Of a stretch of 64,000 nucleotides of DNA, positions 53,978 to 61,697 are shown piece by piece. The stretch is from Ascoidea asiatica JCM 7603 (Eukaryota > Fungi > Ascomycota), in contig BCKQ01000003.1 of NCBI GenBank assembly GCA_001600695.1, positions 776,003-840,002 of the forward strand, given 5' to 3'. A model generated the notes under the pieces. That model worked only from the letters and a program-made list of their open reading frames with translations. It was not told where the DNA came from and searched no databases. Numbering within the stretch: position 1 is the stretch's first letter; each line of letters opens with the position of its first letter. The translations under genes were made by a program, and so were the position numbers.

Positions 53978-54841
53978 TTTTGAATGTTATTATAAAATTT
54001 TGAAAAAAGGTGAAATAAATAGCTATGATATAAAGTATATTTATAATATGTTTTGTTTTTTTTCTTTTCTTTTCTTTCTTTTCTTGGAGAAATATGATAT
54101 TAGTTATTAAAGAGAAAAGTTATAACTTTATTAAACCTTAACATCTTTCACGTCAATCACTTCGTCAATTATCTCGTCAATCACTTGAACAATCAACAAA
54201 AACACTTCAACTCCAGCTCCAGCTCCAATTCAAAGTCCTCTTTCAATCCCATTCAAAGCCTGAGAGTCTCAAAGTCTGATGATTTTTCACTTCCTTTTTT
54301 CTGCACAGAATCTGCACCTTTCCAGGCTGTTTCCTGTTTCTGTGCTCCAACATGACAATTGCACGCTGCTCATTGGCCAGAAGCGCAAACCTCTGCCTAA
54401 CCCCTTTTCTGTCTCCAAACCCCCCGGTGCGAACGTGTGTGTCCGTGGGTTTCTTTTCACTTTTCATGAAGCCCGCAAAAGCCCGAGAAATAAAAAAAAA
54501 AAGCAAAAAAAAAAAGAAAAAGACCGCTTTTGTGCTTATGTAATCCACACGCACTTTCAAAAGAAGTACATCCACAAAAATGGGTTCTTTCAAGAAGAAT
54601 ACCACAAATGTGGCTACACTCTATTTATGCATCTATCTGTATTTACCTACATGATCCGGTTCTCTGGGTAAGAAATGAATTTTGACGTGTTTTGGTTTGT
54701 TTATTTTAAATAAAAGACTTTGGTGGTTAATACAGATAAATTTATCAGATTTTATATTTATTTTATAGAAATAAAGGTTATTATTCAATTGAATTGAAAG
54801 AAATTCATCAAGTTTTATTTTACTTTATATCACTTTCATTA

Positions 54842-54967
54842 ATGAATAATCAAGCTCTGAAACTTTCAGATTTACAAGATATTGATTTTCAATCACAGGA
54901 TGTATTTGAAACTTCTTCCATAAGTAGTTCAAATTCAAATATTAATGATAATGAAACTAATTCATTA

Positions 54968-55013
<46 letters not shown>

Positions 55014-56290
55014 TATTAGAATTTGATCTTAATGATGATGAAAAATCTGATATAGATAATACTGATATACTCTCTAATTTAAATCATTCAAGATCAATTT
55101 TTGAAAATAAATTCTTATCAAATTCAAATACTGATTTTTCAAATTCATTAGATAATTTTAAAAATTTAAAAAAAAAAAAAATTAATTCATTTAATTTATA
55201 TAAAATTAATGAATCTTATAATGATAAATTAATTAGAATTCAAAATGAATTAAATGAATTAAAAGCTTTAAAAGAAATAAATTCAAATGTAATTAAAAAT
55301 AATAAAATTCAACCTATTGAAGATATAAATATAAATAAAGTAAATTTATTATATAAAATTTTAAATGAATTAAATAATTCAACAAATTTAAATTTAATAC
55401 AATCAAAAAATATTAATAATAATAATGATAATAAATTATCAATAGATATTCCAAAAGATGATAAATTAATTAAAAATATAAAAATTAATGAAATTAATAA
55501 ATCTACAAAAGATTCTATAATTCAATTAGAGAAAAAAATTTATAAATTAGAAAAATTAATTGGTTATAATGATAATTTAGATTTATTAAATTTAAATGTT
55601 GATTTTGAAAATTTAAATAATAATAATACTACCAATTCTTTTAAAAATATTGAATATATGATAAATCAATTAAATAGAAAATTTAAATTACTTTCAACAG
55701 ATAATGAAGAAAATAATAATTTTTCAAAAGAAATGATTTTAAATAATATTTTAAATAAAATTGATTTATCTTATCAAAATTTATCAAAAATTGGGAATTT
55801 CAGCAATAATAATAACAATAATCATAATAAATTTTCAATTTCTGATAACCTTAATAATATTAATAATAATGAACATTCTAATGAACATTCTAATGAAAAT
55901 AATAATGAAAATAACATTTCTATTTCAATAACTGAATCTCAAAAAATAAATGATTTATATTCTTTAATAAATACTGATATAATTTCAAAAAAAAATCAAA
56001 ATAATAATAATTTAAAAATAAATTTAAATTCTTTTATATTACCAATAATAAAAAGATTAAATTCTCTAAATTCATTATATAAAGATATGAATTTAAGTAT
56101 AAATTTAGGTAAAAATTTAAATGAAATTATTGATAATTTAAATAATGATTATATTAAATGGAATGAAATTTTAATAAAATCTGAAAATAAATTAATTAAA
56201 GAAGAAAATAATTTTAAAAAAAATAAAGATGAAATAAACTCTTGGATTAAAGAATTAGAATTGAAAATTGATAAATTAAGTGAACAATAA
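54842..56290 (+). CDS. JNM1: Dynactin subunit p50/dynamitin (Jnm1-like)
   Basis: First ATG at 54842; N-terminal DLQDIDFQSQDVFETS, ESYNDKLIRIQNELNEL, LEKKIYKLEKLIG, LPIIKRLNSLNSLY coiled coils. Confidence 0.8.
54968..55012. repeat. (AAT)n poly-Asn microsatellite in dynamitin
   Basis: Direct inspection. Confidence 0.9.
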
Positions 56291-57620: not shown

Positions 57621-59255
57621 TTATTCGCATCTCTCAATTTGGTTTTCCAATTCGAGAATCTTGACTTTATAATACTCGTTCATTGTTTTCAACGATTTCT
57701 TTAATTTTTTAATTTTTTGTTTCTTCTCAAACAATTTAATAGCTAGTATTTTATTGGTAACTTTTGAACCACCATTTTCATGATTCTTATCATTTTTATT
57801 GTCATGGTCATCCTTAAACAAAATTGGGGCTTTATTCAATTTTTGTTCTAAGATATTTTTATCTCTTTCAATTCGACTTAATTTAATCTTTAACTTATAA
57901 TTTTCTAGTATCTTATTTCTTAACTTTTTTTTGTAATTATTTATATTCAAGCTCATTTCATTGATTTCTTTTTTATATTCTGAGTTTAAAATCTTTTCTA
58001 ATTTGAGAGTAGGATTTTCGGTAAAGTTTTTGATTTCATTTCCATTTCCTACCATTCTTCCATTTGTACTTTCATTTTCATTTTCATTTTCATTTTCACT
58101 TTCACTTTCACTTTCCTCTTCACTCGAATTTCGATTTTGATTTTGATCTTTATTTTCTTTTTCATATGTCCCTTTGGAACCTTGAAAATCTAAATCACCT
58201 TCATCATTGAAAAAGATCATATTTCTTGTGATATTAATATTTGAATATTGAGATCTTTTTTTGAAAAATGTATTAAATTGAATTCGATCATTGATACTCA
58301 AGAATGAAACTAAAGTTATTGCCAATGTATTTTTTTTACAATGAAATGAAGCTTCAACAATAATTAAACATAATATATAAAGTTGAAAATAATTTTCTTC
58401 ATTTATAATTTTCATATTCTTTATTTTATTCAAATTCATTGTACTAGGTAAAGAGTTAGTTAATATTGGTAGTAATAACTTTTCAATATTTAATAATGAA
58501 ATATATTTACCAAGTTGAGTATTTATATTATTATTATTATTACTACTACTATCATCATCATTATAATAATTCTCACTTGTGATGGCAGGTGATACAGATA
58601 AAGATGTAAAAGAGTTATGTATTACTGATTCTAACGATTGTGATGATTTTGGTGAGTTTGATGATTTTGGTGATTTTGGTAATTTCGGTGATTTTTGTGA
58701 ATTGGATGATTTGGAAGAGATTGACTTTGAAGACATTGATTTTGAAGACATTGGTGCAGAAAGTCGACTTTTGATAGAATTTTTAAATTCGTTTTTATCA
58801 TAGATTAAATTATTATTAATATAGTAGAAATTATTTACTATATTGATTAACTTTTCAAAATATTTGATTTTTAAATTATAGTTTTTTTGATAATTTGAAA
58901 ACCGATTTAAGAAATTTTTAATTTTATCATCTATTATTAATATTAAAATTTGATTTAAGATCAATGGATCAGTTAATTTCAAATAAATATTCAAATAAAT
59001 TAATTCATCATCATAATTGTCATAATTATTATAAATTTCATAATTTGAATCAGAATCAGATGAATGATCTAAATTGAAATTATTTTTATCATAATTATCA
59101 TAATATTCATAATTAATATTAAATTTTTTCTCAAATTCTTTTTCGATTGGAGAATCTGGAAATTGAGATATCCAATTATAAGTTGCTTTAATGAATTCTT
59201 TATTAAATTTAAATGAAGGAGATGAATTAATATACGAAGGTGATAATGATGACAT
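57621..59255 (-). CDS. Hook/Girdin-like CH-domain protein with C-terminal coiled coil; putative dynein adaptor
   Basis: Ordered blocks NWISQF, YLKLTDPLILNQILILI, NYNLKIKYFEKLINIVNNFY, LYILCLIIVEASFHCKKNTLAITLVSFLS match recalled Hook-domain helices; heptad-rich C-terminus. Confidence 0.65.
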   Translation of the reverse strand: MSSLSPSYINSSPSFKFNKEFIKATYNWISQFPDSPIEKEFEKKFNINYEYYDNYDKNNFNLDHSSDSDSNYEIYNNYDNYDDELIYLNIYLKLTDPLILNQILILIIDDKIKNFLNRFSNYQKNYNLKIKYFEKLINIVNNFYYINNNLIYDKNEFKNSIKSRLSAPMSSKSMSSKSISSKSSNSQKSPKLPKSPKSSNSPKSSQSLESVIHNSFTSLSVSPAITSENYYNDDDSSSNNNNNINTQLGKYISLLNIEKLLLPILTNSLPSTMNLNKIKNMKIINEENYFQLYILCLIIVEASFHCKKNTLAITLVSFLSINDRIQFNTFFKKRSQYSNINITRNMIFFNDEGDLDFQGSKGTYEKENKDQNQNRNSSEEESESESENENENENESTNGRMVGNGNEIKNFTENPTLKLEKILNSEYKKEINEMSLNINNYKKKLRNKILENYKLKIKLSRIERDKNILEQKLNKAPILFKDDHDNKNDKNHENGGSKVTNKILAIKLFEKKQKIKKLKKSLKTMNEYYKVKILELENQIERCE

Positions 59256-59759: not shown

Positions 59760-61697
59760 CTATGGATTAGCGCCGATAGAATTTTGATCTTGATTTTGAT
59801 CTCTTTTTTTAATGATAAATTTTGGTTTTGGTTTAACAACATTAGAATTTATATTAATAATGTTATTCATTGAGTTATTTTGAATGTTGATTGAATCGGA
59901 AGTTGGACGAAATGTATTTGAAAATGAATATGTTCTTGGAGTAGAAGTATTATTATAAGTATTATATTGATTATTAGAATTATTGAGATTATTAGGATTA
60001 TTGAAAGGATAAAATGAAGATGAATTTGTATTTGGAATAAAAGTAGAAGTTGAAATAGAATTTGATATTTGATTAATTTTTCTTTCTTGTTTTTTAATTG
60101 GAATTGAATTTTGAATTGAATTAATATTATTTTGCTTAATTTCATTATTTAAAATTATTTTTTTTCTGTTTCCTGATCTTTTTTTATTTGAGTTTGATAT
60201 TGAAGTAGTTGATAAATTTGATGATAGAGAAGAATTTGAATTTATTTTAGTTAATTCTTTTTGATCTTTTTTATTATTATTTAATTTATTTGATTTATTT
60301 GATTTATTTGATCTATTTAATTTAGATGATTTTATTGAATTATTTGATTTTTCAACAATTTTTTTATTACTTGAATCAATATTTGATAAAGAAAATTTTT
60401 CATTTAAAATTTTAGATTGTTGTTTTTGATTAAATTTTGATTTATTAGATTTATTTGAATCTTTTTTATTTTTATTATCTTTAATATCTTTGTTATCTTT
60501 ATTATCATTTTTAAATTTTTTATCTTTCTTATTTTTATTATTATTATCATTTTTATTATCATTTCCTTTTTTATTATTATTATCTTTTTGAGATTTTATT
60601 GATAATTTTTTTTCTTTAATTTTTTCTTTTAAAGCAGAATTTGAGATAATTGAAATATAATTATAATTATTATTAATAGTAAAGAAATCTTCATCATTTG
60701 GTATAATTTTTTCATCTAAATTGATATCAGTAGTGGTAGTAATTGATTGAAATTTTAAAAATTTTAAATAATATGGATCATTAAGTAAAGTATCATTTAA
60801 AGAATCTGATTTTTGAAATTGATTTATCAGATTAGTATTATTATTAAATTGATCATATTCAGTTAATGGCATTTTATAATAATTTGATAATTGAAAATTA
60901 ATATTATTAAAATTATAAATTTTTAAAATATTTTCATTATTATTAATATTATTTGAAATAAATTTTTTAAAATCTAAGATGAAAGAATTTAAAAGATTAA
61001 TATTTTTGAAAAGTATGAAAGAAGTTGAAGATGAATTTAAAAAAGATTGAGAATAATAATGAATTAAAATTGAATTATTATTAATATAATGATTGAATAA
61101 ATCTTTAAAAATTAAGAGAAAATTGGATTTATTTAAATTTATTGGTAAATTTCTAATTTTTAATTTTTTTGAATCTTTTTTTTTTAGTTTTTCAATAAAT
61201 TCGAATTCTTTCTTGTTTTTAAAATTTGATCTATTCTTTTTATTTGATTTTTTTTTAATTTTATTCTTGTTATTCATTGTTATTTGAGTTGCTTTAGATT
61301 TGATATCATTATCGTTATTATCATTACCATTTTCATTATCTTTATCTTTATCTTTTGCTTGAATTTGAATTTGATTTTGATTTTGATTTTGACTATTTTC
61401 TTGATTTAATTCATGATTTTTAAATTTATTTTTATTTTTATTTCTATTTCTTGAAGAATTTTTTCTGTTACTATTTGGTTTTTGTTTAATTTCTAAATCA
61501 GTAATTAAATTTAAGTTATTTTTTTTCAAATTTTCATTAATGTTATCATTATCTAAAGTTGATTTTAACTCTTTTAATTGTTTTGATCTATTTCTTTGTG
61601 AAGAATATCTTTGTTTCTTTGAATTTGAAATTGGTAAAACTGAAGAGAATGAAACATTTGAAGGGGAAGTAGATATTGAAGAATTAGGAGTCGACAT
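59760..61697 (-). CDS. UPF3: Nonsense-mediated decay factor Upf3 (diverged, with N/K-rich expansions)
   Basis: KLKIRNLPINLNKSNF, LSNYYKMP, DTLLNDPYYLKFL match the Smg4/UPF3 RRM-like domain; K-rich tail. Confidence 0.7.
   Translation of the reverse strand: MSTPNSSISTSPSNVSFSSVLPISNSKKQRYSSQRNRSKQLKELKSTLDNDNINENLKKNNLNLITDLEIKQKPNSNRKNSSRNRNKNKNKFKNHELNQENSQNQNQNQIQIQAKDKDKDNENGNDNNDNDIKSKATQITMNNKNKIKKKSNKKNRSNFKNKKEFEFIEKLKKKDSKKLKIRNLPINLNKSNFLLIFKDLFNHYINNNSILIHYYSQSFLNSSSTSFILFKNINLLNSFILDFKKFISNNINNNENILKIYNFNNINFQLSNYYKMPLTEYDQFNNNTNLINQFQKSDSLNDTLLNDPYYLKFLKFQSITTTTDINLDEKIIPNDEDFFTINNNYNYISIISNSALKEKIKEKKLSIKSQKDNNNKKGNDNKNDNNNKNKKDKKFKNDNKDNKDIKDNKNKKDSNKSNKSKFNQKQQSKILNEKFSLSNIDSSNKKIVEKSNNSIKSSKLNRSNKSNKSNKLNNNKKDQKELTKINSNSSLSSNLSTTSISNSNKKRSGNRKKIILNNEIKQNNINSIQNSIPIKKQERKINQISNSISTSTFIPNTNSSSFYPFNNPNNLNNSNNQYNTYNNTSTPRTYSFSNTFRPTSDSINIQNNSMNNIININSNVVKPKPKFIIKKRDQNQDQNSIGANP

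What the first reader, a model, noticed from the sequence alone, without database searches (positions are those of the whole stretch)
57621..59255. Hidden Hook-domain protein: candidate dynein-dynactin activating adaptor in a budding yeast
Seen: once the low-complexity inserts are ignored, four blocks fall in Hook-domain order. They are NWISQF (cf. TWVKTF), YLKLTDPLILNQILILII (cf. Girdin YVALVDGVFLNQVMLQIN), NYNLKIKYFEKLINIVNNFY (cf. Hook NWRLKISNLKKILKGILDY) and QLYILCLIIVEASFHCKKNTLAITLVSFLS (cf. [27 protein letters not shown]); reference sequences are recalled from memory. A coiled coil of about 130 aa follows. Established: Hook domains bind the dynein light intermediate chain, HookA/Hok1 drive early-endosome transport in Aspergillus and Ustilago, and S. 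cerevisiae has no recognised Hook. Inference: this is a retained but shortened adaptor that lacks the long coiled coil and the C-terminal FTS/FHIP cargo region. It could represent an undescribed dynein transport or positioning system in this yeast lineage.
Basis: partly seen in the sequence, partly recalled or inferred. Interest (0 to 1): 0.85.

Follow-up and report, generated by a model that had tools for sequence, protein, structure and literature searches.

The report
Short Hook-domain protein in a yeast
This AT-rich budding-yeast gene encodes a protein whose N-terminal part is predicted to fold like the Hook domain that links cargo adaptors to the dynein motor in animals and moulds, followed by only a short coiled coil, so it looks like a cut-down relative of Hook in a group of yeasts said to lack Hook, but its function is untested.

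Summary
They are the conserved core of a small family. An exhaustive search found only three relatives: Ascoidea rubescens, Saccharomycopsis crataegensis and a third Saccharomycopsis-like yeast. Conserved neighbouring genes support orthology.

No HMM detects Hook. Pfam HOOK_N, HOOK and NuMA-Hook all gave nothing at E<=10, and a family profile against PDB sequences did not reach Hook. Structure does detect it. In an AF2 model of aa 1-350, Hook3 (Z 12.2 and 10.8), Hook1 (10.7) and NuMA (10.1) rank above about 45 ordinary CH domains (Z<=9.4). The Atlas's ESMFold model of the Ascoidea orthologue independently lands on a HOOK_N cluster (TM 0.67). One source already names that orthologue 'HOOK N-terminal domain-containing protein'.

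Two low-complexity inserts (aa 43-80, 150-242) interrupt the domain. About 110-130 aa of coiled coil follows. The genome showed no HOOK coiled-coil region, FHIP or kinesin-3 signature.

Verdict: a probable short Hook-domain variant restricted to Ascoideales. Dynein LIC binding is inferred. A role as a canonical activating adaptor is unlikely.

The parts
57621..59255 (-). Whole ORF, 544 aa plus stop. Single-copy gene of the Ascoideales short Hook-like family.
59130..59213 (-). Core segment 1 (aa 15-42): first helix of the Hook/CH-like domain, containing NWISQF. pLDDT 81-89.
59016..59129 (-). Insert 1 (aa 43-80): N/Y/D-rich low-complexity loop, absent from the orthologues and disordered in the model.
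58809..59015 (-). Core segment 2 (aa 81-149): helices 78-94, 97-107 and 126-149, containing reader blocks 2 and 3. Invariant N101, L104, D109, I112, K129, Y132, F133, E134, L136.
58530..58808 (-). Insert 2 (aa 150-242): S/K/P-rich low-complexity loop with three SPK motifs. It holds one short conserved motif (L219, V221; LSVS-like) shared with the orthologues.
58260..58529 (-). Core segment 3 (aa 243-332): last helices of the domain (286-305, 309-316, 321-331), containing reader block 4 and a short helix-8-like segment. This is the most conserved part of the family. It aligns to Hook3 up to chain residue 159.
58014..58259 (-). Disordered acidic N/E/S-rich linker (aa 333-414).
57624..58013 (-). 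C-terminal coiled-coil region (aa 415-544): helices 415-475 and 495-543, weakly conserved with the orthologues. It lacks the C-terminal tail seen in Saccharomycopsis.
54794..56290 (+). Context: dynamitin (dynactin p50/Jnm1) gene, 1.3 kb from the target. It is also adjacent to the orthologue in A. rubescens.
59760..61697 (-). Context: 645-aa low-complexity ORF upstream. It sits where the neighbouring UPF3 gene sits in S. crataegensis.

Best explanation
The gene encodes a real, conserved, single-copy protein of the yeast order Ascoideales (Ascoidea and Saccharomycopsis). Its N-terminal 330 residues form a Hook-type calponin-homology-like domain, interrupted in this species by two disordered low-complexity loops. 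A disordered acidic linker and a short coiled coil follow; the coiled coil is inferred to act in dimerisation. It is most likely a remote, shortened relative of the fungal and animal Hook proteins that has lost the long HOOK coiled coil and the FTS/FHIP-binding end. Shown: the gene, the family, the synteny, the predicted fold and the absence of partner signatures. Inferred: the conserved hydrophobic alpha7-alpha8 face binds an amphipathic helix, most plausibly the tail of the dynein light intermediate chain. The dimer would then tether dynein to a still unknown partner, rather than act as a full dynein-dynactin activating adaptor.
For: The ORF is intact and single copy. Microsynteny supports orthology: dynamitin and SOL flank it in A. 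rubescens, and UPF3 in S. crataegensis. The AF2 model of aa 1-350 has pTM 0.57 and core pLDDT of 70-90. An exhaustive VIA search of 48,161 chains put Hook3 5j8e first (Z 10.8, 137/150 aligned) and NuMA Hook 6qja second (Z 10.1), followed almost only by CH domains. A second look gave Hook3 with the LIC peptide, 6b9h, Z 12.2, rmsd 3.0, 144/151 aligned to chain residue 159, and Hook1 1wix Z 10.7. Foldseek's two best hits are the same Hook entries, though weak. The Atlas shape search is headed by a HOOK/HOOK_N cluster. The Atlas's ESMFold model of the A. rubescens orthologue matches a HOOK_N cluster at TM 0.67 over 141 residues. Language-model features give HOOK_N for 21 of 30 nearest clusters, for both the target and the orthologue. 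UniRef names the orthologue as a HOOK N-terminal domain protein. Dynein heavy chain, dynamitin and Num1-like genes are present.
Against: No HMM-level support exists. Pfam HOOK_N, HOOK and HOOK_N_NuMA gave nothing at E<=10 on the target, its pieces, the three orthologues or the six-frame genome. The family profile does not reach any Hook chain in PDB sequences. The model is middling: only 2 of 5 AF2 models exceed mean pLDDT 50, from a 4-sequence alignment. Z values of 10-12 lie in the range where helical folds can match by arrangement alone. In the exhaustive search Hook3 led the best ordinary CH domain by only 1.4 Z; only the 6b9h entry from the second look leads it by about 3. Helix 8 is short, about 11 residues. 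The coiled coil is about 110-130 aa, against the several hundred residues of Hook3 recalled from memory. No FHIP or kinesin-3 signature was found. The LIC was not securely identified: the only lead is a 316-aa P-loop ORF at E 0.064. Expression could not be checked.
Confidence: 0.6

Rival explanations
1. It is a generic CH-domain plus coiled-coil protein with no specific kinship to Hook. The CH-like domain would bind microtubules, actin or another partner, and the top rank of Hook would be within noise.
For: CH domains of Vav3, alpha-actinin, GAS2, utrophin and others score Z 8-9.4, close to Hook3 5j8e at 10.8. No Hook HMM hit was found.
Against: All four Hook-type entries (6b9h, 5j8e, 1wix, 6qja) rank above every ordinary CH domain, and they align 137-148 residues including the extra C-terminal helix. 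The Pfam CH model does not hit either. The feature-based and shape-based Atlas searches return HOOK_N rather than CH families. The known yeast CH plus coiled-coil proteins Nuf2 and EB1/Bim1 are encoded elsewhere.
Confidence: 0.2
2. It is a true dynein-dynactin activating adaptor, a minimal Hook that drives processive transport or positioning of a cargo in this hyphal yeast lineage.
For: It has a Hook-type fold with a conserved alpha7-alpha8 face. It has a dimer-type coiled coil. Dynein, dynactin p50 and Num1-like genes are present. The gene lies next to dynamitin in two Ascoidea-lineage genomes. The candidate LIC tail carries IFNKIF, which has the same pattern as the FFxxLL of LIC helix 1 (PMC6336354).
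Against: The coiled coil of about 110 helical residues in two segments is too short to run along the dynactin filament as known adaptors do (established knowledge, not tested here). No HOOK coiled-coil match was found, and no FHIP or kinesin-3 signature. The target lacks even the C-terminal tail conserved in Saccharomycopsis. Gene adjacency is weak evidence in yeasts and is not kept in S. crataegensis. S. cerevisiae dynein is processive without an adaptor (PMC10886578).
Confidence: 0.12
3. It is a lineage-specific helical protein with no real relation to CH or Hook. The fold assignment would be an artefact of shallow-alignment prediction by networks trained on the PDB.
For: Mean pLDDT is 56, and three of five AF2 models are poor. 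The Atlas ESMFold model of the orthologue has pLDDT 0.57. The recognition score of the feature search was low for the target. No sequence-level link was found.
Against: Two different predictors on two sequences about 40% identical converge on the same domain. Almost the whole list of 50 best structural matches is one superfamily. The confident parts of the model are exactly the conserved blocks.
Confidence: 0.08

Closest known systems
Hook proteins (human HOOK1-3, Aspergillus HookA, Ustilago Hok1; Pfam PF19047 HOOK_N plus PF05622 HOOK)
   Same: The N-terminal domain is predicted to have the Hook fold, including the helix after the CH core (Z 12.2 to 6b9h, 10.8 to 5j8e, 10.7 to 1wix). The domain sits at the N-terminus and is followed by coiled coil. 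The best-conserved stretch is the part that forms the LIC-binding face in Hook3.
   Different: There is no HMM match. Two long disordered inserts lie inside the domain. Helix 8 is short. The coiled coil is about 110-130 aa rather than several hundred, with no PF05622 match. There is no C-terminal FTS/FHIP-binding region, and no FHIP or kinesin-3 was detected in the genome. The family is restricted to Ascoideales as far as it could be searched.
NuMA N-terminal Hook domain (PF21670; PDB 6QJA)
   Same: It has a Hook-type fold (Z 10.1, 137 residues aligned) in a protein that is not an endosome adaptor. NuMA shows that a Hook domain can serve in dynein anchoring rather than vesicle transport.
   Different: There is no PF21670 match. 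NuMA is a very long coiled-coil protein with a CC1-box-like motif and cortical and microtubule-binding regions that are absent here.
Canonical calponin-homology domains (Vav, alpha-actinin, EB1, Ndc80/Nuf2)
   Same: It shares the core helical CH topology (Z 5.6-9.4).
   Different: These score lower than Hook-type domains and align over fewer residues. EB1 and Nuf2 orthologues are encoded elsewhere in this genome.
A. rubescens ASCRUDRAFT_125885 (XP_020049257.1; UniRef100_A0A1D2VMW8, 'HOOK N-terminal domain-containing protein')
   Same: It is the orthologue: E 4.7e-23, 42% identity over matched stretches, the same blocks, and adjacent to dynamitin and SOL.
   Different: It is 424 aa and lacks the two long low-complexity inserts. 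It carries only an automatic database name and no study was found.

Membership tests
Hook family (PF19047 HOOK_N + PF05622 HOOK) | Significant match to the HOOK_N profile HMM | tested here: not met
   There was no hit at E<=10 for the target, its pieces, or the three orthologues whole and in pieces. The six-frame genome search was also empty, but its control was silent.
Hook family (PF19047 HOOK_N + PF05622 HOOK) | Hook-domain three-dimensional fold (CH-like core plus C-terminal helix 8) | tested here: met
   VIA gave 6b9h Z 12.2 (144/151, rmsd 3.0), 5j8e Z 10.8 and 1wix Z 10.7. The Atlas searches gave HOOK clusters. The model is of middling confidence.
Hook family (PF19047 HOOK_N + PF05622 HOOK) | Long central coiled coil (HOOK region) after the domain | tested here: not met
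   There was no PF05622 match. Only helices 415-475 and 495-543 are predicted.
Hook family (PF19047 HOOK_N + PF05622 HOOK) | C-terminal FTS/FHIP-binding region with FHIP and FTS partners in the genome | tested here: inconclusive
   There was no RAI16-like/FHIP match in six frames, but the control was silent. FTS was not searched, because it is an E2-like fold. The target ends before the tail conserved in Saccharomycopsis.
Hook family (PF19047 HOOK_N + PF05622 HOOK) | Binding of the dynein LIC C-terminal helix 1 by helices 7 and 8 | not testable with these tools
   No complex prediction was available. The LIC is only a lead (L001:1459-2409, DLIC E 0.064).
Hook family (PF19047 HOOK_N + PF05622 HOOK) | Co-occurrence with kinesin-3 (Bielska et al. 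2014) | tested here: not met
   There was no Kinesin_assoc match. The genome has six kinesin motor genes, none with that kinesin-3 signature.
Dynein-dynactin activating adaptors (functional class) | LIC-binding module followed by a coiled coil long enough to span the dynactin filament, with a Spindly-type motif | tested here: inconclusive
   A candidate LIC-binding module is present by fold. The coiled coil is only about 110-130 aa. No motif search with a validated pattern was possible.
NuMA-type Hook domain (PF21670) | Match to the HOOK_N_NuMA HMM | tested here: not met
   There was no match at E<=10. The fold-level match is Z 10.1.
CH-domain superfamily | CH fold | tested here: met
   Nearly all of the 50 best chains of the exhaustive structural search are CH or CH-like domains. 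The Pfam CH model itself did not hit.
Nuf2 / EB1 (yeast CH plus coiled-coil proteins) | Being the genome's orthologue of these families | tested here: not met
   Nuf2 is at C22:37472-37822 (E 2.8e-6). EB1 is at C1:601342-601548 (E 3.7e-11).

The most novel reading that the evidence does not exclude
Ascoideales yeasts keep a minimal Hook: a dimeric Hook-domain protein that still grips the dynein light intermediate chain. It would recruit or tune dynein at a specific site, such as the nucleus, the spindle pole body, or an organelle in hyphae. This would happen without FTS/FHIP, kinesin-3 or a long dynactin-spanning coiled coil. It would be the first adaptor-type dynein regulator in budding yeasts and a natural minimal form of the Hook module.
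Probability: 0.22. Interest if true: 0.75.

Novelty: new variant of a known kind. Interest (0 to 1): 0.55.

Why it matters
Budding yeasts are the main model for adaptor-independent dynein. The literature states that Hook and kinesin-3 were lost from Saccharomycotina (PMC3998801, based on three species). A conserved Hook-fold protein in the hyphal Ascoideales would show that the loss was not complete. A Hook domain can apparently persist after its usual partners (FHIP, kinesin-3, long coiled coil) are gone. This raises a directly testable question of what a bare Hook module does with yeast dynein. It also illustrates how AT-driven low-complexity inserts hide a domain from profile HMMs. The weight is limited. 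The evidence is predicted structure only, and the closest orthologue already bears an automatic Hook-domain name.

Tried and rejected
Word-indexed homology searches found nothing new.
- The full-length search and the aa 1-160 search both returned nothing.
- The family-profile search returned only S. crataegensis again.

Other sequence-level searches were empty.
- phmmer and profile searches of PDB sequences gave only noise, with Prp8 best at E 0.29.
- Pfam on sub-pieces was empty.

The single-sequence AF2 model of the full protein was too poor to use for the N-terminal part (pLDDT 43).

Foldseek alone was too weak (E 1.5), because the inserts break local alignment.

I considered and rejected these identities:
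- Nuf2 and EB1/Bim1, whose separate orthologues are encoded elsewhere.
- A TDA11-like family, which gave no Pfam hit.
- Read-through introns as the source of the inserts. Ninety-three open codons at about 20% GC are very unlikely by chance (my estimate, not computed with a tool). The only intron in the family lies elsewhere, after codon 19 in Saccharomycopsis.

The N-terminal exon of the third orthologue (P0002 cluster) was seen in L004, but it was not joined to the gene model.

No profile-profile test against Hook could be run, because no Hook sequence was available by reference.

Full report
**Observation**

The window region is about 20% G+C. ORF 57621-59255 on the minus strand is intact: ATG start, 544 aa, no CTG codons. 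The variant CUG reading of this yeast clade therefore does not affect it.

Between them lie an N/Y/D-rich stretch (aa 43-80) and an S/K/P-rich stretch (aa 150-242). An acidic N/E/S-rich linker (aa 333-414) and a K/L/N/E-rich helical end (aa 415-544) follow.

**Family and organism**

- Word-indexed homology searches were swamped by low complexity and returned nothing.
- An exhaustive phmmer search with aa 1-350 against 1.84 billion representatives gave exactly three relatives:
  - P0001 (424 aa, E 4.7e-23)
  - P0002 (415 aa, E 4.9e-9)
  - P0003 (455 aa, E 3.7e-4)
- P0001 is Ascoidea rubescens ASCRUDRAFT_125885. One source (UniRef100_A0A1D2VMW8) names it 'HOOK N-terminal domain-containing protein'.
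- P0003 is a Saccharomycopsis crataegensis hypothetical protein.
- P0002 is known only from Logan assemblies and a WGS record.
- The gene is single copy in the 20.3-Mb genome.

Microsynteny supports orthology.
- In A. rubescens the gene is immediately followed by dynamitin and 6-phosphogluconolactonase.
- In S. crataegensis it follows UPF3.
- In the window it lies between 6-phosphogluconolactonase/dynamitin and a 645-aa ORF at the UPF3 position.

The window therefore comes from a yeast of the Ascoideales, nearest to Ascoidea.

The Saccharomycopsis genes carry an intron after codon 19. That intron explains the truncated P0002 model.

**Sequence-level tests of the Hook idea all fail**

- Pfam found no family at E<=10 in the target, in its pieces, or in the three orthologues whole or in pieces.
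- Six-frame searches of the genome with HOOK_N, HOOK and HOOK_N_NuMA were empty. The HOOK_N and NuMA controls were silent, so those two say little.
- A profile of the family's N-terminal domains did not reach any Hook chain among PDB sequences.

**Structure-level tests support it**

- The single-sequence AF2 model was unusable for the N-terminal part. It did predict two confident C-terminal helices, 415-475 and 495-543.
- With the four-sequence alignment, AF2 gave pTM 0.57 for aa 1-350. pLDDT is 70-90 over aa 19-40, 81-149, 243-265 and 281-332, and both inserts are disordered. Only two of five models were reasonable.
- Foldseek's two best PDB hits were Hook3 (6b9h) and Hook1 (1wix), at weak E-values.
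- The exhaustive aligner over 48,161 chains ranked Hook3's Hook domain first (5j8e, Z 10.8, 137 of 150 residues). The NuMA Hook domain came second (6qja, Z 10.1). An almost pure list of CH domains followed at Z 9.4 down to 5.
- The second look gave Z 12.2, rmsd 3.0 Å, 144 of 151 residues for Hook3 bound to the LIC peptide. That alignment runs to chain residue 159, that is, through helix 8. Hook1 scored Z 10.7.
- The Atlas shape search was headed by a HOOK plus HOOK_N cluster: 159 residues aligned, rmsd 3.7.
- Independently, the Atlas's ESMFold model of the A. rubescens orthologue matched a 159-aa HOOK_N cluster at TM 0.67 over 141 residues.
- Language-model features gave HOOK_N for 21 of the 30 nearest clusters, for both the target and the orthologue.

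Caveats:
- Z values of 10-12 are within the range where helical folds can match by arrangement alone.
- The alignment behind the model is shallow.
- In the exhaustive search Hook3 led the best ordinary CH domain by only 1.4 Z. Only the 6b9h entry, found in the second look, leads it by about 3.

**Rest of the anatomy and the genome's partners**

- The coiled coil is short and in two segments. It is only weakly conserved.
- The target ends before the C-terminal tail shared by the two Saccharomycopsis proteins.
- The genome has:
  - a dynein heavy chain, in a 4477-aa open frame
  - dynamitin
  - four Num1-type PH proteins
  - Nuf2
  - EB1
- It has six kinesin motors.
- It shows no Kinesin_assoc (kinesin-3) signature and no FHIP-type match.
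- The only LIC lead is a 316-aa P-loop ORF near the heavy-chain gene (DLIC E 0.064). Neither Pfam nor PDB searches confirm it.
- Its polar tail holds one hydrophobic motif, IFNKIF. This has the two-plus-two hydrophobic pattern of LIC helix 1 (FFxxLL; PMC6336354). It is a lead, not a test.

**Interpretation**

The best reading is a short Hook-domain variant. It has a Hook-type CH-like domain with lineage-specific loops, plus a coiled coil inferred to dimerise. It is probably descended from fungal Hook, with loss of the long coiled coil and cargo end.

Binding of the LIC tail by the conserved alpha7-alpha8 face is inferred. So is some dynein-linked tethering role.

A canonical activating adaptor is unlikely, for two reasons:
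- The coiled coil is far shorter than in known adaptors.
- S. cerevisiae dynein moves processively without an adaptor (PMC10886578).

Adjacency to dynamitin is kept in the two Ascoidea-lineage genomes but not in S. crataegensis. It carries little weight.

**Comparison with the literature**

Bielska et al. [quoted passage not shown] I found no paper on Hook in Ascoideales.

The domain call is therefore not wholly new, because an automatic name exists for the orthologue. It is undescribed, and it differs in architecture from known Hooks.

**Steps that could not be run**

- No profile-profile comparison with Hook was possible.
- No complex prediction was possible.

Noticed in passing
window 54794-56290 (+): This is the dynamitin (PF04912, E 2.8e-8) gene. 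The listed TTG start is probably an artefact of the ORF finder, and an ATG 16 codons in (about 54842) is the likelier start. In A. rubescens dynamitin sits directly downstream of the Hook-like gene, while here SOL lies between them and the Hook-like gene is inverted.
   Followed up: partly
window 59760-61697 (-): This 645-aa N/K/S-rich ORF has no Pfam hit at E<=1. It sits where S. crataegensis has a UPF3 (PF03467) gene next to the orthologue, so it may be a strongly eroded Upf3.
   Followed up: partly
L001:1459-2409 (+) = G000:C9:419839-420789: This 316-aa ORF has an intact P-loop (GEEGCGKT) and is the only weak DLIC match (E 0.064). Fungal LICs are reported to have lost nucleotide binding, so its identity is open. 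Its polar tail has a single hydrophobic motif, IFNKIF, resembling LIC helix 1.
   Followed up: partly
L003:8058-8128 and L004 about 1000-1150: The Saccharomycopsis orthologues have a conserved short intron after codon 19, between W and the (L/I)CQF motif. It is absent here and in A. rubescens. The P0002 gene models miss the first exon for this reason.
   Followed up: partly
window 58530-58808 (-), aa 150-242: The serine-rich insert holds three SPK motifs, which are possible proline-directed kinase sites. It also holds a short motif (T/S-L-S-V-S) conserved in all four family members, which may be a regulated loop inside the domain.
   Followed up: no
G000:C6:1053918, C19:130569, C16:248302, C3:688174: Four genes carry a Num1/Mcp5-type PH domain, one of them in a 3458-aa open frame. 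That is more than the single Num1 I recall for S. cerevisiae.
   Followed up: no
L002:8961-9039: The annotated A. rubescens gene model has a 79-nt intron after codon 320, inside the coiled-coil region. If that intron is not real, the C-terminal part of P0001 used in the alignments is partly wrong.
   Followed up: no
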